Notes: generated by a model not told the origin, from the letters alone. A stretch of 64,000 nucleotides of DNA from Pavona decussata (GCA_977016875.1 CDRNST010000151.1:1674001-1738000); one strand, 5' to 3'. Positions 1,302-22,651 are shown, counted from the first letter of the stretch. Translations and numbers: made by a program.

Positions 1302-1985
1302 ATGGCGTCCGAAAGTTTTCTCGCTGTAGCGACTGTGACGAACGTTGAGCAGAATGCTGCTGATTATACAGTTAATGCAGATGCTGTTCAGCTGTTAAAA
1401 TCAAGGCTTTGAACCAAGAATTTAAAGAGGAAGAATTTAATCTTGAAGCGTTGCGTGAAATAAGCGATGCTATCTCCACACCGCCGGTTATGTATAGCAC
1501 AAACACTGGCCACGAGACTGCTTCTATTGCTAGTTCTAAAAGAGGGAAAGGGAAGGGTAGAAATTCTAATAAAGCAACTCAAGAGCAGCAGCAGCACCAC
1601 CAACAGCAGCAACTACAGAGGGAAGGAATGTGCTGTAGTGCCTGATAGCACTTCTCTTCTCTTTCAAAACAGTGGAGTGGCTGCAGAATATGTACCTTCG
1701 CAAACAATGGATTTTATTCAGATCAATAACATATCACCTGTTCAACATATGCCTTTGATTAATCTGCAGCTGGGATTAAACATTCCTGAAAACAGATCTC
1801 AAGCATTGCATTTGCCAGCAAAACTGCAATGTAATAGCATCACACCTTTGCAAGCCCTTTCACCACCTGGAGCTCAAATGGTGGAAGTTATGTTTACATC
1901 AAAGCCGGCTGATGACAATAGGAAGAATATAGTGAAGCCTTACTATCTCAATCAATGTAAGAATAGATTACGCAAGTATCAGTAG
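1302..1985 (+). pseudogene. Unknown, probably viral accessory gene; frameshifted, possibly spliced, truncated by Polinton A left end
   Basis: ATG 1302 (MASESFLAV...), frameshift near 1408 into ORF 1409-1645 (poly-Q), acceptor-like ttctctttcaaaacag ~1672; ORF 1467-1985 ends at a stop inside the AGTAGT terminus. Confidence 0.35.
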
Positions 1986-2340
1986 TAGTCTATTCGGGAT
2001 GACTAGATCAATTTTATTCATGTATTCAAATAGATTTAAGACCCCATGTAGGTATAGGAGAGAAGGTGTAATGAGATGCAAGCGATCTAGGTATAGGAGG
2101 GGTGTAATGAGATGCCAACGGTCTGGGTATAGTAGGGGTTTAATGAGGTGCAAGGGTATGTATGATTTGAAGTTTATTATTGTAAATTAATTGGAGTAAA
2201 GTGTACTGTGTTCTGGCTGTACGATTCCGCCCAACCATCCGGGTAGTACATCAAATATATAGGGAAAGAACAATAGGTGTGCTAAGAACCAATGAGAGAT
2301 CACTGACGGAAACTATTGAACGGGTCAAACTGGTTTTGAG
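1981..2340 (+). repeat. Left terminal inverted repeat of Polinton A
   Basis: Shares exact TAGATCAATTTTATTCATGTATTCAAATAGATT and diverged AATGAGATGCAAG and ATATAGGGAAAGAACAAT blocks with the reverse complement of 23060-23436; internal ~36-bp triplication at 2050-2160. Confidence 0.85.
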
Positions 2341-2549: not shown

Positions 2550-2942
2550 ATGAATCACATGATTGAGCAACAGATCTTTGCTCTGGATATGGAGGCCTTA
2601 ATGTCCCGGTTTCAACGCTTACAGATTGAAGACAAAGTGGTAACTTTACTTAATGCACTTTGGGATGAATTGTGTATCCATACGACAGAGCGTCGCAAAG
2701 TTGAAATCAGTAATGATCAGAATGGGATGGAAGTAGTGATTGGTGAATTGCTAGTACCCACATTTTACTTTATGAACAAGAAGAAATTTTGGCGTCATCT
2801 AAAGAACATTTTAAAGTCACAAGTGCATTCCGAATACTGGCTAAAGATCATCATTCGACAAAACTTTGTAACTGACTGGAGCAATGAACCTTTTATACCA
2901 TGGTATTGGAGCATGAAAGAAACTTTCACCTTTAAACAGTAA
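2550..2942 (+). CDS. Hypothetical Polinton accessory protein (130 aa)
   Basis: Intact ATG-TAA ORF just inside the TIR, AATAAA downstream; no motif recognised. Confidence 0.55.
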   Translation: MNHMIEQQIFALDMEALMSRFQRLQIEDKVVTLLNALWDELCIHTTERRKVEISNDQNGMEVVIGELLVPTFYFMNKKKFWRHLKNILKSQVHSEYWLKIIIRQNFVTDWSNEPFIPWYWSMKETFTFKQ

Positions 2943-3181
2943 AGGAGACATCAAGTGTGTGAAAATTCATTTATTATTACAAAGATATGTGGGAAATAAA
3001 AGAAACAAAAAAGCGTATGAAATGAAACTATTTACATTTTGATTTTATATACAACAAGAAGAAGAAGAAGAAGAAGAAATAAATAAACCCTATTCAACAA
3101 CACCATTTTTGTTTTCTAATTAGAAGAATAGAATGAGAGACGAAAACTATATACATAGGCAGAGACTGCCGAGAAAGGTCC

Positions 3182-3898
3182 TTAAGAAAAATAATACCTG
3201 CGAACCTTTCTTATCAGCCTCCGACAGTGTCTACAATTTTCGTCTCCGTGGCAGTTGGAAGCTATACATGCCACTATTCTCCTAATTAAAAAACAAAATT
3301 CGTGTTGTTGAATAGGTTTTAACCCCTTAAAAAAATAGGTGCAAGCCACGCATTCTGCATCAAAATCGGTGTGGGGGTGTCTCTCGGGGCAGAACTATAG
3401 GAAAGAGAGAACAGAGAAAACGATGTATGAGAAATGACTAGCATGAAAGATTATGCAGAAAACATTTTATACATCGATAACATGCAATAGCTCATCAGTG
3501 TTACTAATAAAAACAATAAAAACAAAACGCATTCTTCCATTGTTTACATTTGTCCGTAAATGTGTTGTAAACTAAAACAAGAACTATCTTTCGAAATGAA
3601 AATACTATTCTTACTCTTTGCCAGCTCCTCATGATTTCTTCGTCAGCCGCCATATGTTCCTCTGACGGCTGACGAAATGGCGCCCGGCGCATTGGGCAAT
3701 TTTGGCTTGCCGGCGTTCTTTCTCTCATCCATCTGAAATGAAATAAATACTTCGTTTAGAAGTTTGAAACATCATACAGGAGCAAATGACATTTTTTTCT
3801 TACCTTTTGATGCACTTTAAGTGCAAAAACTGTCTGCAACAAGGCATGTGCCTTGTCTGGAAGCTTTCTTCCAGACAAATGAAGCATACGTTAAGTAC
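3182..3898 (-). CDS. Spliced RING-finger protein (putative E3 ligase); exons 3898-3804, 3732-3615, 3394-3182
   Basis: GT-AG introns with consistent phases give VLNVCFICLEESFQTRHMPCCRQFLHLKCIKRWMRERTPASQNCPMRRAPF...FCPERHPH...CVAC...CHGDENCRHC...YYFS*; last RING Cys is CGC (Arg). Confidence 0.8.
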
Positions 3899-3959
3899 CT
3901 GTAATAAAGTATAAGGAAGAAAAAAAAAACAGTCAGCAATACTTCATTAGTGTGGCGTC

Positions 3960-4356
3960 GTTTCTTTACAAAGCGGTTGTTGAATAAGGTGTATTGATTT
4001 CAAAACATGTCCTTAGAGAATATCCTATCAATTGACATCAATAGGCAAGTTATGTTTGAGCGGGTCCATTTTTCATACCGCTCTTTTAACAGAAAAAAAA
4101 AAAGTTCTCTTTTTAAACGAAGTAATAAGTTCCCGCTTGTTTCTTTACAAAGCGGTTGACGAATAAGGCGTATTCAAAACATGTCCTTAGAGAATATGTT
4201 TTCAATTGTTATCAATAGGTAAGCTATGTTTGAGCGTGTCCATTTTGCATACTTCTCTTTTAAGAGAAAAAAACAAACGTTCAGCACAGAAATGAAATTT
4301 TCTCATGCTTGCAAGGAAAAGGAAAAATTTCTTTTGAATGAAGTAATGAGTTCCCG
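3960..4356. repeat. Two-copy ~180-bp direct duplication
   Basis: gtttctttacaaagcggttg...caaaacatgtccttagagaatat...gaagtaat(a/g)agttcccg repeated at ~3960 and ~4139. Confidence 0.75.
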
Positions 4357-5184
4357 TGCAAGAGGACGTTTGTTTTTCAGCCAAAGGATGCCTACTTTTA
4401 TTGATTAACACAGCAACAGTTCATAACATTGAATGTCTAAATACGTATATGTTCAATTTACTGACATAAATACGCGTAACAGTTTGAATTGCTTTCCGAA
4501 ACTAAAATTACACTTGAGAGCGTTATCGTCTGTTCTTGTTGACTTCAATTTTTTTTTTTGCGCCTAATTTTTGGCGCCCATTTAATCGCGCGCGCCTTTC
4601 GTCAAGTTGATCTCATTTTCTCCGCTTGTAAGTATAAATAAAATTGAGGTGACATAAATGCGCGTAACAGTTTGAATTGCTTTCCGAAACTAAAATTATA
4701 TTTGAAAGCGTTATCGTCTGTTCTTGTTGACTTCAATTTTTTTTTTCGCGCCTAATTTTTGGCGCCCGTTTAATCGCGCACGCTTTTCGTCAAGTTGATC
4801 TCATTTTCTCCACTAGTAAGTATAAATAAAATTGAGGCGACATAAATACGCGTAACAGTTTGAATTGCTTTCCGAAACTAAAATTATATTTGAGAGCGTT
4901 ATCGTCTTTCCCTGTTGACTTCAAATTTTGGCGCCCATTTAATCGCGCGCGCCTTTCGTCAAGTTGATCTCATTTTCTCCGCTTGTAAGTATAAATAAAA
5001 TTGAGGTGACATAAATACGCGTAAAAGTTTGAATTGCTTTTCCGAAACTAAAATTATATTTGAAAGCATTATCGTCTTTTCCCTGAACAACGCAAAATAA
5101 TTTTCATTGAAATCAACTACACACAAAGTAATTGACAAATTTACTTACCATTCTAATGACAACTTTAGTAATTTCACAGTCCAT
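4170..5184 (-). pseudogene. Two-exon accessory gene (exon 1 5184-5149 MDCEITKVVIRM; exon 2 from 5082), disrupted by internal tandem repeats and stops
   Basis: Minus-strand TATAAAA ~5300, ATG 5184, GTAAGT donor 5148, ttgttcag acceptor 5083; frame GKDDNAFKYNFSFG...KQFKLLRVFMS...KEKYAKWTRSNIAYLL with several TGA/TAA stops. Confidence 0.5.
4462..5082. repeat. ~188-bp tandem repeat, ~3.4 copies
   Basis: Unit gacataaatacgcgtaacagtttgaattgc... at ~4462, 4650, 4838, 5007; contains TTTTGGCGCC and CGCGCGCG. Confidence 0.9.
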
Positions 5185-5501
5185 CTTTTTCGATTTGCTT
5201 TAAGCTCGCTTGCTTTCTACTCTTTCAATCTCTTTCGACTCTTTGCACCACTTCAAAGGTTAACACAACGTGCAAGGGTTCTCCGATGTAAGATGCATTT
5301 TATACCATACATGACGTCGGTAAAAGGTTATTGGATATTAACTATTCACAGTGATTCTTTACTTCATGGAAGAGTTGATTGGGCAAAATGCGTAAAACTA
5401 TCATTGAACTTCATACTGTACGAATGGTTTCAAAAGATGAACGCCTTTATTCAGCTATGTAAATTTTCAACCGTTCAGTTTACCATAACGTTAGACGTTG
5501 T

Positions 5502-6095
5502 ACTGTGTGATTGGAGTTCAATTTACAAGTTCGTTACAATACCGTTACACAATTTACTGTGCGTTTGGCGTATTTTAAATCTGACCGATTTATTAGCGTT
5601 TGGCGTTAAAATCGTTACTGGTTTGACAGCGTCCTTCACCGGATCCATACAATTTACAAGTGCGCTAAAAAACGTTAAACATAACACTGTGTGATTGGTG
5701 TATTTTAAATCTGACCGTTTATAAGCGTTTGGTCTTAAAATTGTAACTGGTTTGACAGCGTCCTTTTTGCTCGGACCGTTCAATTTATAAATTCGTTTAA
5801 AAAAAAAAAAGGTTAAACATTACACTGTGCGATTGGTGTATTCTAAATCTGACCGTTTATAAGCGTTTGGTCTTACAATCGTAACTGGTTTGACAGCGTC
5901 CTTTTTGGTCGGACCGTTCAATTTATCAATTCGTTAAACTTAGTACGGTTAAACAATTTACTGTACGATTGGTTTATTTAAAATCTTACAGGTTTATAAG
6001 TGTTTCGCCTTAAAATCATAACTTGTCTGACAGCGTCCTTTTTGGTCGGAAAATTGGCTATAAAAGTACAGATCCAGTACGAGTTTTTTCATTCC
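5502..6095. promoter_or_regulatory. ~130-137-bp x4 tandem repeat forming a probable bidirectional promoter/enhancer
   Basis: Units actgtg(c/t)gattggtgtattttaaatctgaccg...aactggtttgacagcgtcc at ~5557, 5686, 5824, 5960; ATTGG (reverse CCAAT) in most units; TATAAAAG at 6059 before ATG 6107; opposite TATA ~5300. Confidence 0.65.
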
Positions 6096-6106
6096 AAGCC
6101 AACAAA

Positions 6107-6964
6107 ATGAAGCAAAAAGTAATGTTCAACGCTAACGTCTCAAATGCTGTTTTCAGCAAAAGTAGAAAGACAGATGGATGCATTCAACGAATACAAAATA
6201 CACCTTTGGTTGAGGAAAGCGAAATTGTTTCACGCAATTCTGAATTTCAGTTGATAAACGCCGCTCAAAAGATAGCGCTACACGAACATCACTTACAGCG
6301 AAAGAGATGTCTACTCCCAATGCGACAGGACATTTTTGAAGCCTTTTGGACCATATACGAAGACGAGACGTGGAATCATCTGGTTTACGTGGTTGGTACT
6401 GTCGATATAACGTCAGTACATGTAGAAACATTTGCGCTCGAAGCTGTTCGGTCTGTGGACAAAAATGAAATCGTGAAGTTGTGGCACGAAAAATGCACGT
6501 TTCTTTTCCCATCCGTTGAGCAACATCAGATGGTTCCGTTTCGCGAACGTTGGTTGCAAACTCAATTTAAAGAAGAAAAGAACATTAAAAAAATGTTAAA
6601 CAAATTATCTGAAAGAGTGGAGAAATCAACACATTGGTTAAGCGATCTCGTAGACGAATTGGTGACCTCTCCTGATACGCCACAAACACCTGAATTCAAC
6701 TATGAAAGTGTTACGGAAGCTTTAGCTGAACTGGAATCATTCCATTCTGAGATCTTTTCGGAACACTCGACACCGGAAGAAGAAGAAAAAGAAGAAGAAG
6801 AAGAAGAAGGTATTCAACACGAAACGACTGATGATTTTGACTACGATGTAACGGACAGTGAGCTCGTGGAATGTATGGAATGTTGGGAAGAACAGCAACT
6901 AGGAAACGCAAAAGAAATGTGGGATTACAATTACCTTTTAAACGATGAGGTTAGCCAAATGTAA
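6107..6964 (+). CDS. Hypothetical accessory protein with highly acidic C-terminus (285 aa)
   Basis: Intact ORF after a TATA box; poly-E tract, SPDTPQTP, DFDYDVTDSELVECMECWEE. Confidence 0.7.
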   Translation: MKQKVMFNANVSNAVFSKSRKTDGCIQRIQNTPLVEESEIVSRNSEFQLINAAQKIALHEHHLQRKRCLLPMRQDIFEAFWTIYEDETWNHLVYVVGTVDITSVHVETFALEAVRSVDKNEIVKLWHEKCTFLFPSVEQHQMVPFRERWLQTQFKEEKNIKKMLNKLSERVEKSTHWLSDLVDELVTSPDTPQTPEFNYESVTEALAELESFHSEIFSEHSTPEEEEKEEEEEEGIQHETTDDFDYDVTDSELVECMECWEEQQLGNAKEMWDYNYLLNDEVSQM

Positions 6965-7444
6965 GAACCTTTAATCGTTTTGAGTAATTTTAATTTTTCA
7001 TTGCCATGTTCATTTGTTTTGTAATATACGTTTCAATCAAGATTGAAATGTTCTATTGTTTGAATTGATTAGACAAACACCATTTTGAATGAATGATTAG
7101 ACCGTCATTTTAATTAGTTTGTAACACCATTATTTGAATAGACAACAACACATCTATAGATAATTAATCAATTTTTTTTTTTGCTTTTGATTCCTACGTT
7201 TATTTGTTGGAGTATGAAGTAAGTGTGCAAGTACCACCGCTGATTATTATGCAAGGACGTTACTGTACTATTTTTCTGCAAGTAACGCCATAACGTTACT
7301 GATCTATTTTTCTGCAAGTACAACCACTGACTAGTATGCAAGTATCGCCAGAATCGTCCACCATTTTGACTTAAATAGGTATGAATCATTTTGAATTTAT
7401 TAGTTCTTTGATTTTTCTTACAGTTAATTTTCTTTTGTTCATAG

Positions 7445-10400
7445 TTTGAAGACGAAGAATGTTTGATAGCGGAGCAAGAGGTTGGCGCTGGTAACAATCT
7501 GTGGACCTCTGACCAGCATTATACTCTCCGTGAAGTGGCTAGGAGACGCGTCCGAAAATTTAATACCACGGGAACCGACTATCACCTTTCATTGAACCCA
7601 CAGCTTGATGGACTTCCGCTAATGGATCGACTTGGTAATGTTTTGGATTCAATGGTCGACGAGATGACGATGGGTATGGCTGACAATGATCTCGTCCGAT
7701 TTGTTCTACAAAGCCGTTCTCTAGAATATCCTATTTCTTTACCTTTCATGCCACGTCATGAACTGAATGCAGAAAGGATCATGAGTGAGGTGCAGCGAGT
7801 TTTGCAGTCAAACGAAAACGTCAACCTTAAGGATGGAATGAGTGTCCATTTGGTTCACGTTGGGATGCCACAGGGGGGAGTGGCCTCACGTAAGAGAAAA
7901 CATTATGGATTTAAGTTGTCCAAGTTTCTGGACAGCAAACAATGTGTCCTGCGCATCAAGAACAAAGATTTTCTATGCCTTGCCCGCGCTTTAGTAACGG
8001 ACATTGCTCGACAAGAGAAAGATCCTGAATGGAATTCAATTCGCCTAGGACGTAAGCAGCAACGGCTCCTTGCTCAACGAATGCATCAGAAGGCTGGTGT
8101 GCACGAAGGTCTCTGTGGCCTACCAGAAGTCGCCAAATTTCAAAACGTGATTGAAGATTACCAAATCATCGTTCTGTCTGCCAAACATTTCAACGCCATT
8201 ATCTATGAAGGACCACGACGAGATAAACAAATTTACCTATATCATCACGAAAATCATTATGACGTCATCACATCCGTCTCCGCTTTCTTAGGTAGAAGTT
8301 ATTGGTGCTTAGAATGTAAGAAAGGATACAACAACAAAGAAGAACATCGTTGCAGTAAAATATGCAAGTGCTGCTTCACCGAAGGTTGTCAAGGGTATAT
8401 CCAGAAAGTACCGTGGCGAGAGTGTGGGGAGTGTCACAGAATGTTCGCCAGAGACGAATGCTACGCTAACCACTGCCGACCCAACAAAGAAGGAGAATCG
8501 GTTTGTCAAAAGTTCTACAAATGTAAAAAATGTAACAAAGTCATGTCGCACAAGAAAAGAAGTCCAAAAGCTCACATGTGTGGTGAAAAAATGTGTTGGA
8601 ACTGTGAGGAATTTGTGGACCCCAATACGCATCGCTGCTACATGAAGCCTATCGTGTTTCAACAAGCAGAAGGGAAACAGACGTAAAAGAAGACGTGTTT
8701 CAGAAGAGCTGATTGACGATGACGTAGAGGAAAGTGATGAACAAAAAGGGCAGGAATATTTGTTCTTCGATATCGAGAGCAGGCAAGACGATGGACAGCA
8801 TATCGCCAATTTATTAATTGTACAAGATGAAACGGGGTTTGAAATGGTGTTCAAGGGGGATGACTGCGTGGACCAGTTTGGCACGTGGCTGTTAGATGGA
8901 ACTCATGAAGGTGCCATCGTCACCGCCCACAACCTCAGGGGTTATGACGGGTTTCTCCTCTGTGAATACTTCTACAAAGAGTGTCTATTACCAAGCCTAA
9001 TCCTGAGCGGTGCCAAAATCATGTCTATGGAACTCGAACAAGCCAAGATCAAGTTCCGCGATTCTTTAAATTTCCTCCCAATGCCACTGAAAGCCTTGCC
9101 CAAAACCTTTGGTCTGACGGAACTCAAGAAAGGTTACTTCCCTCATTTCTTTAACAGAAAAGAAAATCAGCAGTATGTTGGTCCTCTTCCCCCTGTTGAA
9201 AACTACGATCCAGATGGCATGAGTACGAAAGAACGTCAAGAATTCCTCAGGTGGTATGAAGAAATGACAAATGAAGAGCATGTCTTTGATTTTGAAAAGG
9301 AAATCGAGGAATATTGTCGCAGCGATGTAGACATTCTCAGACGGTGCTGCCTGGAGTTTAAACAGTTGATGGAAGAAACCTGCAATCTCGACCCTTTCAA
9401 GTACTGTGTTACCATTGCAAGTGCCTGTAACCGTGTGTTCCGACAAAATTTCTTAAAAGAAAACACTATTGGTCTCATTCCTGCACAAGGGTAGCAACCC
9501 GCCCGAAAATATTCTGTCATGGCCCTCCAGTGGCTAGTGTGGGTTCATCACCAGACAGGAGACCGTATTCTACACGCTTTGAATGGGGGAGAGCAACGAA
9601 TCGATGGTAACTACGTGGATGGCTATAATCCTGAGAAGACGACCATCTATGAATTCATGGGGTGCCTGTGGCATGGTTGTTCCCGATGCTATCTACATAA
9701 TACCATGAACCCAGTGAATGACACAAGCATGGAAGATCTCTTGGAAGGTACCATTCGCAAAGTTGAGCATTTCAAGAACCTTGGATTCCAAGTAGAAGTG
9801 AAATGGGAATGTGAATTCAAGCAAGAGCTAACAACCAACCCAGAGATGAAATCTTTTGTTGAAAGTCTCAAGTTTGACACGCCTTTAGAACCCCGGCATG
9901 CGTTTTTCGGTGGACGTACAAATGCTATCTGTCTTCACAAGGAAGTGAATGAGAACGAGAAGATCCATTACGTGGACTTTACATCATTGTACCCTTGGAC
10001 AAACAAGTATTGCAAAATTCCAATCCAGCATCCTGAGATTTTAACAATTGAAGCCTTAATCAACCGTTCACCCCGTGAGTTCTTTGGGCTGATCAAGTGT
10101 GACATCCTTCCACCCACCTTTCTGTTCCACCCTGTGCTGCCCTACCGTGCCAATGGAAAACTGATGTTCCCTCTCTGCAGAACATGTGCTGAGAGCCTAC
10201 AACAGGCACCCTGTGAACATACAGATGAAGAACGTATGCTGTCTGGAACCTGGTGCTCCATTGAAATTGATAAGGCGTTGGAGCTGGGATACCGCGTGGT
10301 TCGAATGATTGAGGTGTGGCACTTCCCTCAGAAATCGTCCGAGCTCTTTACAGGGTACATCGATACCTTCCTTAAAATCAAGCAGGAAGCGAGTGGGTGG

Positions 10401-11221
10401 CCCTCTTGATGTGAGTCAGAAGCTCAAAAACAAGAGTACATTAGAGAGTATAAACGGAAAGAAGGCATCAAGTTGGACCATGGAAAGATTAAGAAGAACC
10501 CTGGACTACGTTCACTCGCCAAGTTAATGTTGAATTCCTTCTGGGGAAAATTTGGCCAACGCGACAATATGCCTAGGGTGGAGCTTGTGAAGGACCCAGA
10601 ACGTTACTTCCGGCTTCTCACCTGTCGGTCGACGCAAGTCAAAAACATTCAACTCGTCAACGACGAATGTGTAGAAGTGTATTACACTCAAGGGGATGGA
10701 TTTGTTCCCATGTCTTATAAGACCAATGTCGTAATCGCTGCTTTCACGACAGCCCATGCCAGGCTGAAGCTCTACTCGGTGCTCGAACGTCTTCAGGGAC
10801 GGGTGCTGTACTTTGACACCGACTCTGTGATATTTACAAGCCAGACTGATGAATGGATACCACCCTTAGTGACTACCTGGGAGAACTGACGAACGAACTT
10901 GATGATGGTGAGTACATCACCACGTTTGCGTCTGGAGGACCTAAAAACTACACATATCAAACAAAGAATGGGAAAACAGTCTGTAAGGTCAGAGGATTCA
11001 CCCTCAATTTTCGTGGATCACAGAAGCTCAACTTTGAAACCATGTGTGGTCAAGTCTGCAATCCAAATGGAGAACCAATCTATCTGGAGAACCCTCATTT
11101 CATCAAACGTAATGCGAAAACAAAGACGATTCATACAAGCAAGTTGACGAAGAAATATAACGTGGTGTATGACAAAAGGGTTGTACAAGGTTTCAATACA
11201 TTCCCATATGGTTACCGCTGA
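7445..11221 (+). pseudogene. pPolB: Protein-primed family B DNA polymerase (pPolB) with terminal-protein/OTU-like N-terminus, Zn fingers and VSR-like nuclease insert
   Basis: FFDIES, AHNLRGYDG, YCRSDVDIL, EFMGCLWHGC/VKWEC, DFTSLYP, KLMLNSFWGK, YFDTDS, GPKNY; OTU-like DFLCLARA...HYD; frameshifts ~8680 and ~10865, stops 9492 and 10407; preceded by acceptor ttcatag 7444. Confidence 0.97.
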
Positions 11222-11310
11222 AGAGCGACGACCTCATTGTGGAGGATAGGGATGGCTATAAGGGGAGGTTTGGAGGCCATCTACCGCTCATTACACATTC
11301 AACTGTCAGT

Positions 11311-11706
11311 ATGAACAGACTGTATTTTTTCCTGGTGCGTGGCTGCGCTCAAACACTTGTACAGCCTACCTCTTTGCCAATCGTTTCCTCTCACCATTGG
11401 TTGGATGTTTTGAAAGAAATAGGAGCCATGCCCTGGGGTAGGCTGATGAGCTTTTATGCTTATATGGCTCGAAGCAACGCACCTCTGAGAGAACAATATG
11501 CATTTCACCTAATGTTATGTGATACGTATCCATCTCATTATCCTACTCCCTGGTGGATGATTCGCCAACTAATAAAGACTCCTTGGTTAATGTTATGGAA
11601 AAGGATAAAAGGCGGACGGAACAAGTTACATTGGTCATTCGTTAGACAGCCATGGGCAGTGCTACAAGTCGTCTTTGTGCAAGTTCAACTCCTACCCTGG
11701 CTTTAA
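11311..11706 (+). CDS. Putative viral Bcl-2-like protein (131 aa)
   Basis: Own TATAAG (~11257); BH1-like VLKEIGAMPWGRLMSFYAY; BH2-like WKRIKGGR (CGG one base from TGG); hydrophobic C-terminus. Confidence 0.45.
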   Translation: MNRLYFFLVRGCAQTLVQPTSLPIVSSHHWLDVLKEIGAMPWGRLMSFYAYMARSNAPLREQYAFHLMLCDTYPSHYPTPWWMIRQLIKTPWLMLWKRIKGGRNKLHWSFVRQPWAVLQVVFVQVQLLPWL

Positions 11707-11861
11707 GTGATATATGCCAGAGGATGCGATGTTTAGTTGCATGTTGCGGTAGTCAAGTACACATCGATGTAAGAGATGCCACAGAAGAATACGAAGAGGG
11801 AAACGAGGAAGACGAATACCAAAGATCACACGAATCGTTTACTAGAGAAACTGTATTATGA
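11652..11861 (+). CDS. Small Cys-Cys protein with N-myristoylation motif
   Basis: MGSATSRLC...MRCLVACCGSQV plus acidic tail; similar ORFs at 23892-24206 and 43880-44266. Confidence 0.6.
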   Translation: MGSATSRLCASSTPTLALSDICQRMRCLVACCGSQVHIDVRDATEEYEEGNEEDEYQRSHESFTRETVL

Positions 11862-13600
11862 ATTTGATCGCCCTTCCGCCTTAGGTGGAGTACAAAAATT
11901 GTATCGAGCAGCACGTCAGTATGGACTAACCCGCTTACAAGTTCTTCAGTGGTTGCAACAACAACCTGGCTACACTCTCCACAAACCAGCAAGAAAACGC
12001 TTTCGTCGCAATAGAGTATTTGTCAACGGTTTGGATGAACAGTGGCAAGCGGATCAGGCAGATCTTCAGAGTTTGAGTCGCTGGAACAGTGGTCATAAAT
12101 ACTTGTTGACTTGCATTGATGTCCTATCCAAGTATGCGTGGGTGGTTCCATTGAAATCTAAGTCTGCTTCGGCTTTGGTAGCGGCCTTTACAAACATATT
12201 TAAGCAAGGATGTAAACCAGAAAGGTTGCAGACAGATGCAGGGACGGAATTCATGAACCGTAGCTTTCAAACATTTCTCAAGAGTCATGATGTTCGTCAT
12301 TTTGTCACATACAACAAATTACATACAGAATTTTTATATGATAACGTCTATTTTGTTCGTTATAGGTGGATAGACAGCTTTATTTCAACAGGGTAACTCT
12401 TTCAGCAAAAACTACTACCATTATTAGACCCTAAATACAATAACCTGCCATACTAGCAGTGAAAGAATAGAATAGAATAGAATAGATACTTTATTCAGAC
12501 ATTGCAGCCATGGGCTAAATTACATCTTGACTAACAATCATAAAAGTGAAAAAATAGAATTAAAAATAGACCACAAGGTTAAAAAATTAATTAAAATGTT
12601 CATAAGCTGTATGCTTTGCTCCTAACAAAACTCTTCTTACAACGAACGGTCTTACAAAGGGGGCGACCGAACCCTCTCGAGTTTCTGAGCGAGTAATCGC
12701 CATTGTTTGTTGCTGGGAGAAGCTTGTGGAGCCTATGCTGCGGATTTGAGAGGACAACTAATCCACCTGACGATTTTATACGCTTATCGCGGCGAATTTG
12801 ATCGTCAGCGAAAATCGAACGATTGATGCCGACACACCTGGCAATGGTTTTCACCGACAGTCGCAGGGATGTGGCAGTTTTGTAAACTCATGTGATAAAA
12901 TCTCCCAACCTGATGGATTGGCTTTACTGGCGATTCGCAGCAATAAAAGTAGAAAATCGCAGGAACGGGTACACTTGGCGAATGCCGGTGAATTTAATTT
13001 CCGATATCTGACATTGCAGATATCGTCATTGTTGACGCAAGCAAGCGCTTTGCAGCCCATAGGAAAAATCAAGTGAAAATAATCATATTTTGTAGAAACA
13101 CAAGTAAAACGTTATCCTTTATTCAATTAACTCGTTAAAAAGCGTGATTTAAAAAAAAAATGTCGCAGACAATTCCTTTTGTCTTGAAATTAATGAATAA
13201 CGCTTGTTTATTCACAGGTGCAAAAAGAAAAAAGCTAAATCGCGTTTGACGTCACAAACAAACCTTTTAACTGTTGGGGGGGGGTAGTTAAGATTCATTC
13301 TTGTAAAGAACATTTTATTTCTTGGGCTACGGCAAAACAGTAATAATTATGGAGACAAAGTGTAAGACAAAGGCGCAAGTAGTTGAACGATTCAACAGAA
13401 CCTTGAAACATCTTCTATGGCGATTATTTACTATGAGCAGCTCGTATCATTACCTGGACAAGTTAGCCAAGTTGGTCAATGACAACTACAATCAGAGCGT
13501 ACATCGTAGTATAAAAATGAAACCCGCAGATGTGACAGTTTTTAATGCCCAAGACATATGGAGAACCTTGTATGGTAAACAGACCTCGACCATAAAGTAT
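11776..13600 (+). pseudogene. int: Retroviral-type (rve) integrase of Polinton A, split by insertion 12318-13366, C-terminus deleted
   Basis: LEKLYY..., WQADQADL, LTCIDVLSKYAW, QTDAGTEF, HFVTYN | TKAQVVERFNRTLK...HRSIKMKP. Confidence 0.93.
12465..12790 (-). mobile_element. LINE (CR1/L2-group) 3' fragment inside the integrase
   Basis: NPQHRLHKLLP...YSLR...CKTVRCKKSFV C-terminus, AATAAA and (CTATT)n tail. Confidence 0.7.
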
Positions 13601-13837
13601 GATACAGGAATGCAAATTGCAAAAGATGTCATCAAGGGTCAGTCTTTGAAGAAAGCAGCGAAAGCGAGGGCAAAGACTGCCGGTAAACAGTTTCTGACAG
13701 GTGCTTTTCAGGACCTTACGCAACAAGGTGGTGGGGGAAGACTACTTAAGCGCAAACGAAAAGCGACTCCTGCCAGTTCAAGACAGACCAAGAAACGGAG
13801 AACATCACCTTTAAAGTTCAAGACCATTTTCGACTAA
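13601..13837 (+). pseudogene. C-terminal half of basic virion core-like protein, fused in frame to the integrase
   Basis: GMQIAKDVIKGQSLKKAAKARA...QQGGGG...RKRK...TIFD* directly before MCP; GG protease-site-like motif. Confidence 0.7.
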
Positions 13838-13839
13838 AG

Positions 13840-15166
13840 ATGACCTCAGCTCACCCTCCCTCTGCCCCCGGTGAAAATTCGAGCTTACAGTTATTTCAAG
13901 TACCGGTCACAGATGTTTCCATTCTTAAAAGTAAATGGGTGGATTATGAACCAGTTCAAAGTGGAACCAACCCTATCGAGTTTGTCATCAAGCCTCTATC
14001 TGATTACATTGACATCAACAAAACAACTGCGATTGGTGGTGAAGATTACCAAACGAAATGGAGGGGATACAGGGGGTGGAAAGAAGTATACTTTGATCAA
14101 CAACGCGCTTCATTCGCTCATCAAACAGTTTACCATCAAGTTGAACGAAACACTTGTCACAGAACAGTCCGACACGCAAGCGTACATTGCCTACATCAAG
14201 ACCTTGCTTAATTTTACTGAACAGGCAAAGAAATCTTACCTAACCAAAGCATTGTACTACAAAGACACAGCAGGACATATAGATGTAGTAGGCAACACTT
14301 CTGACAATAACTGGGGGCTCAAGAAGAGGGGTGCATTTACCAATGCTAGTGCTGAAGTAGGGCTGGTTGGTGTACCCCTGTGTTATCTGTTGAACACCAA
14401 TGAGCTGCTGCTGGACAACATAGAAATCAAAATCAAGATTGATCTAAACGGCGATGAATTTGTTCTAATGAGTGGAGAAGAGGCGAATGATTGCAAGATA
14501 AAGATAATGTCAAATACTCTCAGAGTCCACACGGTACGCGTAGCTGACAGTACCAAACTATAGGATGTTAGTATCATGCAAGGACCGTCAGGACAAAAAG
14601 CCTTACCTGCTATCTACATGCTGACAAGGACCCCAACACACGCGAGGATTATCCCCAGGGGTGTGCTGAATCATACGGAGACGGATCTCTTCAACGGACT
14701 TATTCCTCAATGCATCATATTTGGAATGGTGCGAAATGATGCTTACAATGGTAGCTTGGCAAGAAATCCGTTCAATTTTCAGCTGTTTGATGTGAATGCA
14801 GTACAACTGACGGTCAATGGTGAAGAAATCCCTTATTCAGTGATAGATTTGGCAGGAGGAAAGAGAATCGATGGGTACAATACACTCTTCTCAGGCAGTG
14901 GTGAAATGAACTGTGGTCATGGTATTGATATTGACAGAGAGGATTGGGAAGGTGGATACGGCTTATTCCGCTTGGATACCACTCCTGCAGGTAGTGGCCA
15001 CCCAGATCACCTGATACCTCATCGCAGCGGCAACGTCAATTTGCATCTGAAATTTGGAACCCGGACACCAGAAGTTTTGAACTTAATCGTATACCCAGAA
15101 TTCCAAAATCATTTGGAGATTGCCCGCAATAGACGCTTGGTATACGATCTGTCTCAAGGTGCTTGA
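13840..15166 (+). pseudogene. MCP: Double jelly-roll major capsid protein
   Basis: LQLFQVPVTDVSI, PIEFVI, NNALHSLIKQ, YYKDTAG, AYNGSLARNPFNFQ; frameshift ~14025, stop 14561. Confidence 0.92.
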
Positions 15167-15168
15167 AG

Positions 15169-15698
15169 ATGCATACCACTCAAGAATTATGGCAAGCCTC
15201 AATACACGATCCTGTCCTAGCACCCGTCATGAAAGGAGTATTTCCAAGTGAGAAGTTACCAATCGTTGATACGTATCCTTCAGCAATGATTGCAAATACA
15301 AATCCTCATGATCAACCTGGAACGCATTGGATTGTGATGTACTTTGTATCGCCTCAAGAAAGCGAATTCTTTGACAGCTATGGATTCCTCCTGAGAGCTA
15401 TGGTATGGATGGATACGTACTGAGGGAAACAACATATTACAATGACAAGCCAATGCAAGGCTTAACCTCAGATGTGTGTGGAGACTATTCCCTGTTTTAC
15501 TTACTTCATCGAGCACGCAATATAGATTTAAACACTATTCAAAATAAATTTCTGCGATATGATTCACAATGGAACAATTCACAAGTAGCACAATTTGTAC
15601 ACACCTACATTCAGTCATTAACGAATGTTAGGAATGAAAACGTCTCACAATGTGAGGAGCAAGCTTGTAAATCTTTCAAATGTTGGCGTAATCAATAA
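15169..15698 (+). pseudogene. Adenain-like cysteine maturation protease
   Basis: GVFPS, NTNPHDQPGTHW, EFFDSYG, MQGLTSDVCGDY; frameshift ~15390. Confidence 0.92.
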
Positions 15699-15813
15699 AT
15701 AAAGTTTTGTTGATGTTAAAATGAATGATGTGTGCGCATCTTTGATATATCACTTTAAAAAGGAACATCGATCAACAAGTTATCATAACGTTGCTGCTTT
15801 TCATTGCGAGAAG

Positions 15814-16489
15814 ATGTCCCAATTCAAATGTCCAAGCAGTATTATGATAGCAGGGCCAAGTCAGTGTGGCAAGACGACGTTTACAAAACAGTTACTTTAA
15901 CAAGCGGATTCTTTATTTGAACGGCCTATTCGTAAAATTGTATATTGCTATGGACAATGGCAGGAATGTTTTAGGAACATGACAGCTCAAGTGACATTTG
16001 TAGAGGGTATTCCCGAAGATATTCCTAGTTTATTTCCAGCAAACTGCCGACCAGGAATACTCGTACTGGATGACTTAATGAGAAATTGCAGTGATGACGG
16101 ACGTATTCTCGATCTGTTTACTAAGGTGTCTCATCACTGTGATGTAACCTGTGTATTTGACCCAGAACCTTTTTCCACCTGGAAAGTTTTCGCGGAGTAT
16201 CTCTCTGAATGCCCACTTCATTATTGCTTTTAACAACCCTCGCGATACGCTGGGTTTTCGAACATTGGCTCAGCAGGCATTCGCAGGAAATGTACCTTAC
16301 GTATGGGAAAGCTTTCAAGATGCGACGTCAAACCCATTCGGTTATCTTGTCTTGGACTTACATCCTCATACCCAAAATATTCAACGGTTACGGACAAGGA
16401 TATTGCCAACGTCACATTCTTATCCCGTGATTTACGTAGACAAGAAATGTGATAAAACAGAAGAACCACTACCGGTGGATTTCAGTTAA
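15814..16489 (+). pseudogene. A32/FtsK-like genome packaging ATPase
   Basis: Walker A GPSQCGKT, Walker B LVLDDLM, SHH, TQNLF, ISLNAH, NPRD; stop 15898, frameshift ~16150. Confidence 0.93.
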
Positions 16490-17864: not shown

Positions 17865-18037
17865 TGTTACAATATTGTTATTGCGTGACACTGTCACAGC
17901 CTCGTGGCATGCCTACGTCACAGTCTCGTTTTCAATAAAAACTTACTTGTTTGAACCGCCATCTTGAATGTGAGCTAATCTTCTTCTCTCATCGTCTGTT
18001 CGTCCGCTAAGGAAGACTACGCGTTCAACTTGTTACA
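17865..18037 (+). repeat. 5' LTR
   Basis: TGTTAC...TTACA followed by PBS. Confidence 0.9.
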
Positions 18038-18205
18038 TGGTGGCAGCGAGGGATAAAGAACAACTTCGTCAGTGACTACTGCTGTCGTCAATTCTCCGAA
18101 CCTTTAAAAACTCGCTGTTTGCTCCACGCATCTCTGCTGTTGCACGTGGACCTTCGCTGACCTTCGCAACTCGTAAGTCGCTCTTTTCAAAAAAATCGTC
18201 TAAAT

Positions 18206-22309: not shown

Positions 22310-22486
22310 ACTGTTCTCTTTGCAAGACACATTGAGGCTTTGACAGCGCATTTCATGCTGCTGCCAATTGACTGTGAACACTATAGTACAAAGTTGTTGT
22401 TGTTGTTTTTTTTTCTACCACTTATTACTCGCCAGTTCTAGGTTATTAGGAAAATTTTGTTTAAAAAAAAAAAAAAATGGGGAGGA

Positions 22487-22651
22487 TGTTACAATATTGT
22501 TATTGCGTGACACTGTCACAGCCTCGTGGCATGCCTACGTCACAGTCTCGTTTTCAATAAAAACTTACTTGTTTGAACCGCCATCTTGAATGTGAGCTAA
22601 TCTTCTTCTCTCATCGTCTGTTCGTCCGCTAAGGAAGACTACGCGTTCAAC
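22487..22651 (+). repeat. 3' LTR (terminal 8 bp missing)
   Basis: 165 bp identical to 17865-18029. Confidence 0.9.

What the first reader, a model, noticed from the sequence alone, without database searches (positions are those of the whole stretch)
3182..11861. Adenovirus-like early host-control module in a cnidarian-type Polinton
Seen: around pPolB the element carries a repeat-built divergent promoter, a spliced minus-strand unit encoding a RING finger, an acidic plus-strand protein, E2F/CHR-like motifs, a Bcl-2-like ORF and a myristoylation-motif protein. Known: adenovirus early regions combine an acidic activator (E1A), a Bcl-2 mimic (E1B-19K), ubiquitin-ligase hijacking and E2F-driven polymerase expression. 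Inference: this is an analogous program, implying a true viral life cycle; ORF callers miss much of it because of introns.
Basis: partly seen in the sequence, partly recalled or inferred. Interest (0 to 1): 0.8.

Follow-up and report, generated by a model that had tools for sequence, protein, structure and literature searches.

The report
Accessory genes of a coral Polinton
This is the accessory and replication half of an endogenous adintovirus-type Polinton in a coral-like genome: its RING-finger, acidic and small helical genes are real and conserved, but their likeness to adenovirus E1A and Bcl-2-type proteins is not borne out.

Summary
A three-exon minus-strand gene (3182-3907) encodes a RING-type zinc finger. 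Coral proteins colinear with all three exons confirm the splice model. Three tandem arrays (174, 188 and 138 bp) fill the spacer up to a conserved gene for a helical, acidic protein of about 285 aa (6107-6964), which lies just upstream of pPolB. Between pPolB and the integrase lie a conserved helical domain of about 90 aa and a conserved Met-Gly-initiated, Cys-rich, acidic peptide of about 70 aa.

The adenovirus reading is only partly supported. The acidic protein has no E1A motifs and no family or fold match. The "Bcl-2-like" ORF has no Bcl-2 family hit in 21 relatives and only non-significant fold matches (TM 0.32 or less). The myristoylation ORF is fused to that helical domain in two relatives, one of them named as a coral adintovirus protein. 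The E2F-like sites come from one repeated unit and lack the usual pairing with a CHR.

This copy is interrupted in several core genes and carries a nested LTR retrotransposon. Accessory "Oncoid" genes upstream of PolB, and Bcl2/IAP homologues, were already described for adintoviruses (PMC8502044). I count this as a new member of a known kind.

The parts
1984..2308 (.). Left terminal inverted repeat of the element; contains a 36-bp tandem array at 2049-2154
   Evidence: Inverted-repeat pairs with 23111-23436. blastn 75% identity over 313 nt. The alignment starts at an AG-initial terminus.
2550..2942 (+). ORF of 130 aa, unknown, convergent with the RING gene
   Evidence: ORF list. No Pfam family. 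Not searched further.
3083..3321 (.). Inverted duplication (palindrome) that includes the 3' part of RING exon 3
   Evidence: Inverted arms 3084-3131/3274-3321 (90% complementary) and 3137-3179/3204-3246. Relatives' C-terminal residues also match the plus strand at 3083-3186 in tblastn.
3182..3907 (-). Three-exon gene for a RING-type zinc finger with a C-terminal Cys/His-rich domain, about 140 aa in relatives. Exons: about 3907-3804, 3732-3615, and 3394-3185 plus the stop codon to 3182.
   Evidence: GT..AG introns of 71 and 220 nt. Exon 1 hits zf-RING_2 at E=0.0067. Exon 3 has 14 relatives. P0045, P0050 and P0058 are colinear with all three exons. Relatives hit RING Pfam models at E 4e-5 to 6e-6. 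The family profile hits solved RING E3 ligases at E 1.4e-4. The window copy keeps 7 of 8 ligand positions, and no initiator ATG was found in the open frame.
3960..4282 (.). Tandem array, 174-bp unit, 1.8 copies
   Evidence: TRF, repeat families D6 and D9, blastn 85%.
4462..5085 (.). Tandem array, 188/169-bp unit, about 3.4 copies. Each full unit carries, on the + strand, a CHR-like hexamer, one or two E2F-like octamers and a TATA-like heptamer.
   Evidence: TRF, D1/D3/D4, motif positions, sequence.
5516..6050 (.). Tandem array, 138-bp unit, 4 copies, each with an inverted CCAAT pentamer. It ends just before the acidic gene's TATA at 6059.
   Evidence: TRF, D2/D5/D7/D8, motif positions.
6107..6964 (+). 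Gene for a conserved acidic helical protein (285 aa from the ATG at 6107). The listed ORF starts at a TTG at 6023. Contains a copy-specific (GAA)11 run at 6776-6809.
   Evidence: 14 relatives at 41-55% identity, 297-330 aa, starting at the position of this ATG. TATA at 6059. pI 4.6 and 34% D/E in the last third. AF2 core residues 100-200 are confident helices. No Pfam, PDB or fold match.
7463..11221 (+). Protein-primed family B DNA polymerase gene with a long Cys-rich N-terminal region. Split into five ORF pieces.
   Evidence: Pfam DNA_pol_B_2 on three pieces covers profile positions 11-197, 208-364 and 366-459 (E 1.7e-23, 3.3e-17, 1.5e-6). The N-terminal 407-aa piece has no Pfam or PDB hit.
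11311..11706 (+). ORF whose first 90 aa or so (to about 11580) are a conserved five-helix domain with an invariant WGR motif.
   Evidence: 29 relatives, many of exactly 91 aa, one named 'hypothetical protein [Rhodactis coral adintovirus]'. AF2 pLDDT 62-86 over residues 1-90 and below 50 beyond. No Bcl-2 family or PDB sequence hit. Only non-significant fold matches.
11652..11861 (+). ORF of 69 aa starting Met-Gly, with a Cys cluster and an acidic tail (myristoylation-consensus ORF). It overlaps the preceding ORF and the integrase start in other frames.
   Evidence: ORF list. The same peptide occurs as separate 73-aa proteins (P0092, P0094) and as the C-terminal half of single 174-175-aa ORFs (P0025, P0033).
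11776..13837 (+). Retrovirus-type integrase gene (rve), interrupted
   Evidence: Pfam rve E=2e-13 on the first ORF piece. The second piece continues the integrase by eye. No Pfam family in the intervening ORFs.
13840..16489 (+). Putative morphogenesis genes (capsid-like, adenain-like protease, packaging-ATPase-like), each split into two or three ORFs. Identities are not verified by any tool.
   Evidence: ORF list. Only a weak Peptidase_C5 match at E=0.051. No PDB sequence hits.
17865..22651 (+). Nested LTR retrotransposon (Ty3/Gypsy-type gag-pol ORF 18206-22309)
   Evidence: 165-bp LTRs 100% identical. Pfam RVT_1, RT_RNaseH, Integrase_H2C2, rve, gag-asp_proteas.
23111..23436 (.). Right terminal inverted repeat

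Best explanation
The stretch is the accessory-plus-replication half of an endogenous adintovirus-type Polinton (Maverick), about 21.4 kb between terminal inverted repeats at 1984 and 23436, in an anthozoan (coral-like) genome.

Shown: a three-exon minus-strand gene for a protein of about 140 aa with an N-terminal RING-type zinc finger and a C-terminal Cys/His-rich domain. A 2.1-kb non-coding spacer built from three tandem arrays. A plus-strand gene with its own TATA box for a conserved, helical, acidic protein of about 285 aa, directly upstream of pPolB. After pPolB, a conserved five-helix domain of about 90 aa followed by a conserved Met-Gly-initiated, Cys-rich, acidic peptide of about 70 aa. 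Relatives carry these last two either as two ORFs or as one ORF of about 175 aa.

Inferred: the RING protein is an element-encoded E3 ubiquitin ligase that acts on host or element proteins. The repeat spacer is the control region from which the RING gene is read leftward and the acidic gene and pPolB rightward. The acidic protein serves transcription or replication: either as an activator or as the terminal protein for protein priming. The Met-Gly peptide is lipid-anchored to membranes.

Together these form the lineage's accessory set, the counterpart of the 'Oncoid'/accessory region described upstream of PolB in adintoviruses. They are not homologues of adenovirus early proteins. As it stands this copy is interrupted in several core genes and carries a nested retrotransposon, so it documents the gene set rather than an active element.
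For: Element identity: pPolB and rve Pfam hits, TIRs, and a relative named as a Rhodactis coral adintovirus protein. RING gene: canonical splice sites; relatives in Acropora palmata, A. digitifera, A. millepora and Oculina patagonica colinear with the three exons; RING Pfam models at E 4e-5 to 6e-6; family profile against solved RING E3 ligases at E 1.4e-4, with nearly all of 82 hits being RING ligases. Acidic gene: 14 relatives with conserved start, length, N-terminal domain and C-terminal motif, and acidic composition conserved. Helical domain and Met-Gly peptide. Acidic-family and helical-family proteins occur on contigs of identical length in five cases. TATA 48 nt before the ATG at 6107. 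Prior description of such accessory regions: PMC8502044.
Against: No function was tested. All RING Pfam scores lie just below the gathering cut-offs. The window's RING copy lacks one of eight ligand positions and has no visible initiator codon. No TATA-like motif lies within about 1.4 kb upstream of the RING gene on its strand. The promoter role of the arrays rests on position and short motifs. Synteny in relatives is only indirect (equal contig lengths). The right-hand morphogenesis genes have no tool support. The best acidic-family relative is only 55% identical whereas the helical family reaches 92%, so the module may be mosaic.
Confidence: 0.7

Rival explanations
1. One reading: an adenovirus-like early programme. 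The acidic protein acts like E1A, the helical ORF like E1B-19K/Bcl-2, the RING protein redirects ubiquitination, and E2F sites drive polymerase expression.
For: Gene positions upstream of and around pPolB match where adintovirus 'Oncoid' genes lie. The acidic tail is conserved. WGR is invariant at the start of a helix, with a conserved WW about 40 residues later. Bcl-2, Bfl-1 and Bcl-xL chains make up most of the top 50 PDB fold matches, and two BALF1 entries and a Bak entry appear in the viral library. E2F-like octamers are enriched in the 188-bp array, about 60 nt upstream of TATA-like motifs.
Against: No conserved LxCxE, CR1 or CxxC motif in the acidic family. No Pfam hit to adenovirus E1A or anything else at E up to 10 apart from two chance-level hits. 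Best fold match E=1. The helical domain has about 90 aa and five helices. No Pfam Bcl-2 or E1B-19K hit in 21 members and no PDB sequence hit. The E2F-like sites are copies of one unit, giving about 0.03 expected per unit before correcting for the several motifs tried. They are 87-101 nt from the nearest CHR-like hexamer, not the 4-nt CDE/CHR spacing known from cell-cycle promoters.
Confidence: 0.15
2. The acidic protein is the terminal protein used by pPolB for protein-primed replication, so 6107-11221 is a replication module rather than a host-control module.
For: From established knowledge of phi29 (p3/p2), PRD1 (P8/P1) and adenovirus (pTP/Pol), the terminal-protein gene sits next to the polymerase gene, and the phi29 protein is about 270 aa, helical, with an acidic DNA-mimicking priming domain. 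Here the protein has about 285-330 aa, lies on the same strand directly upstream of pPolB, is modelled as all-helical, has an acidic last third, and has a strongly conserved C-terminal motif rich in Tyr/Ser.
Against: No terminal protein appears among the PDB fold matches or sequence matches. Terminal proteins are not alignable across families, so the test is weak either way. Polinton pPolB has a long N-terminal region that could carry this role instead.
Confidence: 0.25
3. The accessory ORFs are chance ORFs or neutral remnants in a dead element and encode nothing.
For: This copy is interrupted in several core genes, and its TIR arms are only about 75-80% alike. Short ORFs survive decay by chance. 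The Met-Gly pattern alone is expected about 0.6 times among the 44 ORFs of the region (my estimate).
Against: All three families have relatives at 40-58% identity that keep start, length and end. The RING exons keep canonical splice sites and colinearity. 91-aa versions of the helical domain recur in several lineages.
Confidence: 0.03
4. The RING gene, and perhaps the others, are host genes captured by or domesticated from the element, now serving the coral.
For: NCBI annotates relatives as uncharacterized host proteins in three Acropora species and in Oculina.
Against: In the window the gene lies inside the TIRs. Such annotation is what an endogenous element would receive in any case. The helical family includes a protein from an assembled coral adintovirus.
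Confidence: 0.07

Closest known systems
Adintoviruses / animal Polintons with accessory 'Oncoid', Bcl2/IAP and 'Adintoc' genes (Starrett et al. 2021, PMC8502044)
   Same: pPolB of the pfam03175 type with a long N-terminal region, retrovirus-type integrase, TIRs, and accessory genes of unknown fold placed upstream of PolB. One relative of the helical ORF is named as a coral adintovirus protein.
   Different: The acidic protein lacks the motif set that defines an Oncoid (LxCxE, CK2 site, CR1, paired CxxC). A spliced RING gene is not mentioned in that paper ('RING' and 'splic' have 0 occurrences). No true Bcl2 homologue is found here.
Adenovirus early regions (E1A, E1B-19K, E4orf6/E1B-55K ligase hijack, E2F-dependent E2 promoter)
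   Same: Loose functional analogy: accessory genes next to a protein-primed polymerase, a link to the ubiquitin system, an acidic protein, and E2F-like sites.
   Different: No named hit to any adenovirus early protein came back from the Pfam, PDB-sequence or fold searches. The ligase here is self-encoded. No Rb-binding motif. Different promoter architecture.
RING E3 ubiquitin ligases, cellular RING-H2 type and viral (synoviolin, RLIM, APC11; equine herpesvirus 1 RING domain)
   Same: Eight-ligand cross-brace pattern and the Trp after the sixth ligand. Profile hits at E 1.4e-4 to 0.024. Pfam zf-RING_2, zf-ANAPC11, zf-rbx1 and RINGv.
   Different: Adjacent Cys-Cys at ligands 3 and 4 (a C4HC3-like spacing). 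A private C-terminal Cys/His-rich domain with no family. Scores just under the Pfam gathering thresholds.
Bcl-2 family
   Same: Helical. Invariant WGR at a helix start, and a conserved WW about 40 residues downstream, recalling the BH1/BH2 spacing (a lead from memory, not a test). Family members dominate the non-significant fold matches.
   Different: About 90 aa and five helices instead of about 140 aa or more and seven to eight. No family or sequence hit. TM 0.32 or less.
Terminal proteins of protein-primed replicons (phi29 p3, PRD1 P8, adenovirus pTP)
   Same: Gene position next to pPolB, size, helical nature, acidic C-terminal part.
   Different: No sequence or fold similarity detected. 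No priming residue identified.

Membership tests
Polinton/Maverick (adintovirus type) | Protein-primed family B DNA polymerase | tested here: met
   Pfam DNA_pol_B_2 on three ORF pieces, E 1.7e-23 to 1.5e-6, profile positions 11-459 of 468.
Polinton/Maverick (adintovirus type) | Retrovirus-type (rve) integrase | tested here: met
   Pfam rve E=2e-13.
Polinton/Maverick (adintovirus type) | Long terminal inverted repeats | tested here: met
   About 320-450 nt arms, 75-80% identical, with a 33-nt identical core.
Polinton/Maverick (adintovirus type) | Target-site duplication of 5-6 bp | tested here: not met
   The flanks next to the two termini do not match.
Polinton/Maverick (adintovirus type) | Adenain-type protease, jelly-roll capsid proteins, packaging ATPase | tested here: inconclusive
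   Only Peptidase_C5 at E=0.051. No Pfam or PDB sequence hits for the capsid-like and ATPase-like ORFs. Their identities rest on position and reading by eye.
RING-type E3 ubiquitin ligase | Eight Cys/His zinc ligands in cross-brace spacing | tested here: met
   Met for the family: six N-terminal ligand columns are invariant in alignment A6, and the last pair is present in P0045, P0050 and P0058. The window copy has 7 of 8.
RING-type E3 ubiquitin ligase | Match to curated RING models | tested here: inconclusive
   zf-RING_2 at 24.1-26.9 bits against a cut-off of 27.3. RINGv, zf-ANAPC11 and zf-rbx1 are also below cut-off. However, the family profile hits solved RING ligases at E 1.4e-4.
RING-type E3 ubiquitin ligase | E2 binding and ligase activity | not testable with these tools
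   Biochemical property.
Bcl-2 family (including viral Bcl-2 mimics such as adenovirus E1B-19K) | Match to the Bcl-2 domain model or to solved family members by sequence | tested here: not met
   0 of 21 members hit Pfam Bcl-2 or E1B-19K at E up to 10. The profile gives 0 PDB sequence hits at E up to 10.
Bcl-2 family (including viral Bcl-2 mimics such as adenovirus E1B-19K) | Seven- to eight-helix bundle around a central hairpin | tested here: not met
   The conserved domain has about 90 aa and five helices. Foldseek TM 0.32 or less, E 1.3 or more. The model is only of moderate confidence (pLDDT 65).
Bcl-2 family (including viral Bcl-2 mimics such as adenovirus E1B-19K) | BH1-type NWGR motif at a helix start | tested here: inconclusive
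   G, R and L are invariant, W nearly so, and N is present in most members. A four-residue motif is a lead, not proof.
Adenovirus E1A-like / adintovirus Oncoid | LxCxE with CK2 site, CR1 motif, paired CxxC | tested here: not met
   None is conserved in the 15 family members scanned. No Pfam E1A hit.
N-myristoylated protein | Met-Gly start with the consensus at positions 2-7 | tested here: met
   The window, P0092, P0094, P0025 and P0033 all fit.
N-myristoylated protein | The Gly is at the mature N-terminus | tested here: inconclusive
   Separate ORFs in the window, P0092 and P0094. Internal to single ORFs in P0025, P0033 and P0089. Conservation starts within two residues of the Met.
E2F/CDE-CHR cell-cycle promoter | E2F consensus site | tested here: met
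   Four sites in the 188-bp array against 0.14 per kb in the window. They are copies of one unit.
E2F/CDE-CHR cell-cycle promoter | CHR placed a few bases downstream of the CDE/E2F site | tested here: not met
   The nearest CHR-like hexamers are 87-101 nt away.

The most novel reading that the evidence does not exclude
Coral adintovirus-type Polintons carry a conserved, partly intron-containing host-interaction cassette. It would consist of a self-encoded RING ubiquitin ligase, a minimal (about 90 aa) Bcl-2-like WGR domain coupled to a myristoylated and palmitoylated acidic peptide, and an acidic protein next to pPolB that is either a transactivator or the long-sought Polinton terminal protein.
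Probability: 0.15. Interest if true: 0.65.

Novelty: new member of a known kind. Interest (0 to 1): 0.4.

Why it matters
Animal Polintons (adintoviruses) are thought to be the stock from which adenoviruses arose, yet their accessory genes are mostly unnamed. This locus shows that three such gene families are conserved across stony-coral genomes and in a coral adintovirus. It also shows that one of them is spliced and therefore invisible to the prokaryote-style ORF callers used in surveys of coral polintoviruses. That gives concrete, searchable markers for asking how these elements deal with their hosts: a RING protein, an acidic protein beside pPolB, and a helical domain plus Met-Gly peptide. 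It does not show an adenovirus-type early programme.

Tried and rejected
- Pfam at E up to 10 on the acidic ORF, the helical ORF, the Met-Gly ORF, the pPolB N-terminal piece and RING exons 2 and 3 gave nothing meaningful.
- PDB sequence searches with profiles A1, A2 and A4 gave nothing.
- PDB sequence searches with the pPolB N-terminal piece and with the protease-like and capsid-like ORFs gave nothing. The OTU-like domain that the literature reports in adintovirus PolB could therefore not be confirmed.
- Foldseek of the acidic-protein model against PDB: best E=1.
- Foldseek of the helical model against PDB and BFVD: only E of 1.3 or more.
- Target-site duplication: not found.
- Literature search for a RING or E3 ligase in Polintons or adintoviruses: nothing specific.
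- I considered reading the interruptions of pPolB as short introns like those of the RING gene. I rejected modelling them, because no tool or relative supports an intron there.
- I considered an LxCxE-like reading of the first RING ligand pair. I rejected it because that Cys is a zinc ligand.

Full report
**Setting**

The finding lies inside one mobile element. Inverted arms at 1984-2308 and 23111-23436 enclose about 21.4 kb. The arms are 75-80% alike, with a 33-nt identical core. I found no target-site duplication.

Inside the arms are:
- a protein-primed family B polymerase: Pfam DNA_pol_B_2 on three ORF pieces, profile positions 11-459 of 468, E down to 1.7e-23;
- a retrovirus-type integrase: rve, E=2e-13;
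- ORFs to the right that look like capsid, adenain-type protease and packaging ATPase genes. These have almost no tool support: Peptidase_C5 at E=0.051 and no PDB sequence hits;
- a Ty3/Gypsy-type LTR retrotransposon nested at 17865-22651. Its LTRs are 100% identical, and its ORF matches RVT_1, RNase H, integrase and aspartic protease models.

One relative of an ORF in the finding is named by NCBI nr as "hypothetical protein [Rhodactis coral adintovirus]". Relatives of another ORF are annotated in Acropora palmata, A. digitifera, A. millepora and Oculina patagonica. The element is therefore an endogenous adintovirus-type Polinton of an anthozoan.

**The RING unit (3182-3907, minus strand)**

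Read on the minus strand, an open stretch ends at 3804 with a consensus donor. An acceptor precedes 3732 and the frame continues. A second donor follows 3615, and an acceptor precedes 3394, from which the frame runs to the stop at 3182-3184. The introns are 71 and 220 nt, both GT..AG.

- Exon 1 alone gives zf-RING_2 at E=0.0067.
- Exon 3 alone in the full representative library found 14 relatives.
- Three of these (P0045 137 aa, P0050 141 aa, P0058 206 aa) carry the exon-3 homology at their C-terminus and a RING finger at their N-terminus.
- In tblastn they match the window as three colinear pieces, at 3889-3803, 3734-3630 and 3394-3191, with 48-53% identity for P0045. The exon 2-exon 3 junction is colinear with no residue missing.
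- The relatives hit zf-RING_2 (E 4e-5 to 6e-6), zf-ANAPC11, zf-rbx1 and RINGv, all just below the gathering scores.
- A profile of the family hits solved RING E3 ligases: synoviolin 1.4e-4, RLIM 4.8e-4, then APC11, RNF13, CBL, TRIM2 and the equine herpesvirus 1 RING domain. Nearly all of the 82 hits at E up to 1 are RING ligases.

The spliced RING gene is confirmed. In the window copy, 7 of the 8 ligand positions kept by the relatives are Cys/His, and I found no initiator ATG in the open frame ahead of the finger. The C-terminal Cys/His-rich domain has no known family. The joined three-exon product was not sent to any tool, because it has no reference.

**The spacer (3908-6106)**

Three tandem arrays fill most of it: 174 bp x1.8, 188/169 bp x about 3.4, and 138 bp x4.

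- Each 188-bp unit carries on the plus strand a CHR-like hexamer, one or two E2F-like octamers and, about 60 nt further, a TATA-like heptamer.
- Four of the window's nine E2F-type octamers lie in this 0.6-kb array, against 5.4 expected in the whole window. They are copies of one unit, so they count as about one event. I estimate roughly 0.03 expected per unit, before correcting for the several motifs tried.
- CHR-like and CCAAT motifs occur near background density.
- The nearest CHR-like hexamers are 87-101 nt from the E2F-like sites. This is not the close CDE/CHR pairing of cell-cycle promoters (established knowledge).
- The 138-bp units each carry an inverted CCAAT. The last one lies about 90 nt before a TATA at 6059, which is 48 nt before the ATG at 6107.
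- No TATA-like motif lies upstream of the RING gene on its own strand within the first 1.4 kb.

"Repeat-built" is shown. "Divergent promoter" is a reasonable inference from position alone.

**The acidic protein (6107-6964)**

The word search found 14 relatives, all without a Pfam domain apart from one that carries a chromodomain. The full-length ones are 297-330 aa and 41-55% identical over 91% of the query.

- The alignment shows a strongly conserved N-terminal domain of about 200 residues, a variable acidic linker and a conserved C-terminal motif. The relatives start where the window has its ATG at 6107.
- Full-length members have pI 4.6-4.8, with 23-34% Asp+Glu in the last third. The acidic tail is therefore a family trait, while the window's poly-Glu run is a (GAA)11 microsatellite.
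- No LxCxE, CR1-type or CxxC motif is conserved.
- Pfam at E up to 10 gives only two chance-level hits and no adenovirus E1A family.
- The family profile gives no meaningful PDB sequence hit.
- AlphaFold2 gives a confident helical core at residues 100-200 (pLDDT 85-94; overall 60.5). Foldseek against PDB gives nothing better than E=1.

The gene is real and conserved. Its likeness to E1A is limited to net charge and position. An alternative I find at least as good is that it is the terminal protein for protein priming. It has the right position beside the polymerase gene, the right size, a helical build and an acidic C-terminal part, as in phi29, PRD1 and adenovirus (established knowledge). Nothing here can test that (no terminal protein among the fold matches).

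**The "Bcl-2-like" ORF and the myristoylation ORF (11239-11861)**

The 155-aa ORF has 10 relatives by single-sequence search and 29 by profile.

- The conserved part is a domain of about 90 aa starting at the ATG at 11311. Several lineages encode it as a protein of exactly 91 aa. The window's extra C-terminal 40 residues are not conserved and are modelled with pLDDT below 50.
- Gly, Arg and Leu of a WGR-Leu motif are invariant, and a WW pair about 40 residues later is nearly invariant. This motif is evidently what suggested Bcl-2 (BH1).
- None of 21 members hits Pfam Bcl-2, or any apoptosis-regulator family, at E up to 10.
- Family profiles find no PDB chain by sequence at E up to 10.
- The AlphaFold2 model (pLDDT 65, five helices in residues 1-90) gives no Foldseek match below E=1.3.
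- Most of the top 50 PDB matches are Bcl-2, Bfl-1 or Bcl-xL chains, and two BALF1 entries and a Bak entry appear in the viral library. Their values are E 2.6-9.1, probability 0.14 or less, TM 0.32 or less and rmsd 7-12 A.

I read this as a local sequence echo of the same motif, not a fold match. A very reduced Bcl-2-like domain is not excluded (I put it near 0.15-0.2), but membership is not supported.

The Met-Gly ORF is conserved: a Met-Gly start fitting the myristoylation consensus, a Cys cluster and an acidic tail. It occurs as a separate 73-aa protein (P0092, P0094). It also occurs as the C-terminal half of single 174-175-aa ORFs that begin with the helical domain (P0025, P0089, and P0033 from the coral adintovirus). 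In the window, and in P0029/P0034, the two parts are in different frames. They form one unit, with the arrangement varying among lineages. Conservation begins within two residues of the Met, which favours a real N-terminus. Whether the peptide is made separately is open.

**State of this copy (counts only)**

- pPolB is split into five ORF pieces: two changes of frame and two in-frame interruptions.
- The integrase has one interruption by about 0.9 kb of unrelated sequence.
- The putative capsid gene has one change of frame and one in-frame interruption.
- The putative protease has one change of frame, and so does the putative ATPase.
- There is one nested retrotransposon insertion.
- The RING gene has one ligand position substituted, and no initiator codon was found.

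The Pfam polymerase profile is covered almost continuously across the pieces, so little is missing. Some interruptions could be short introns like those of the RING gene. No tool or relative supports that here, so I modelled none. The acidic gene, the helical ORF and the Met-Gly ORF are open.

**Comparison with what is known**

Starrett et al. (PMC8502044) defined adintoviruses. They reported "Oncoid" genes with Rb-binding-type motifs "upstream of the PolB gene", homologues of Bcl2 and IAP, conserved unknowns ("Adintoc") and an OTU-like N-terminal domain in PolB. The survey of stony-coral polintoviruses (PMC11131425) found several frequent proteins of unknown function and expression of the hallmark genes.

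What this locus adds:
- a RING gene that is spliced. No mention of RING or splicing appears in PMC8502044, and no paper in the library links adintoviruses to an E3 ligase;
- the definition of three conserved accessory families in corals;
- indirect linkage of the acidic and helical families, which occur on contigs of identical length in five cases.

- I sent no joined-exon sequence to any tool.
- Slip: while reasoning I recalled from memory some letters of two animal-virus proteins, a herpesvirus small tegument protein and a papillomavirus oncoprotein motif context.
- Slip: my first notebook entry states where the integrase ORF stops and resumes, and my reasoning located some interruptions from the ORF table. 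Three scripts printed plain frame translations in which stops are visible. I have deleted nothing and repeat none of those places here.

**Verdict**

The adenovirus-like interpretation is partly supported, as analogy only. I classify this as a new member of a known kind, of moderate interest.

Noticed in passing
window 3083-3321: The 3' part of RING exon 3 is duplicated in inverted orientation just past the gene's stop. This makes a palindrome of about 240 bp between the convergent ORF 2550-2942 and the RING gene. It may be a hairpin or terminator, or an accident of this copy.
   Followed up: partly
window 17865-22651: A Ty3/Gypsy-type LTR retrotransposon with an uninterrupted 1367-aa gag-pol ORF and 100% identical 165-bp LTRs is nested in the right arm of the Polinton. 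It is a very recent insertion into an older element.
   Followed up: yes
window 7463-8686: The N-terminal 407-aa piece of pPolB is rich in CxxC pairs and has no Pfam or PDB sequence hit. The literature reports an OTU-like deubiquitinase domain at this position in adintovirus PolB, which would be a second link to the ubiquitin system. I could not confirm it here.
   Followed up: partly
window 6107-6964 versus 11311-11580: The best database relative of the helical domain is 92% identical to the window, whereas the best relative of the acidic protein is only 55% identical, although the two families share contigs. This suggests either modular exchange or very unequal evolutionary rates.
   Followed up: no
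window 25884-37466: About 3.3 tandem copies of a 3.5-kb unit, 94-98% identical, with repeated ORFs of 131-159 aa that have no Pfam family.
   Followed up: partly
window 49600-52400: A degenerate satellite with 39-bp and 102-bp periods (about 27 copies of the 39-mer) and strong G-over-C skew (0.39).
   Followed up: no
window 41453-41914: An ORF with a Myb/SANT-like DNA-binding domain (Myb_DNA-bind_4, E=7e-8), of the kind often carried by Harbinger-type transposons.
   Followed up: no
window 2049-2154 and the matching part of the right arm: A 36-bp tandem repeat (2.9 copies) sits inside the terminal inverted repeat.
   Followed up: no
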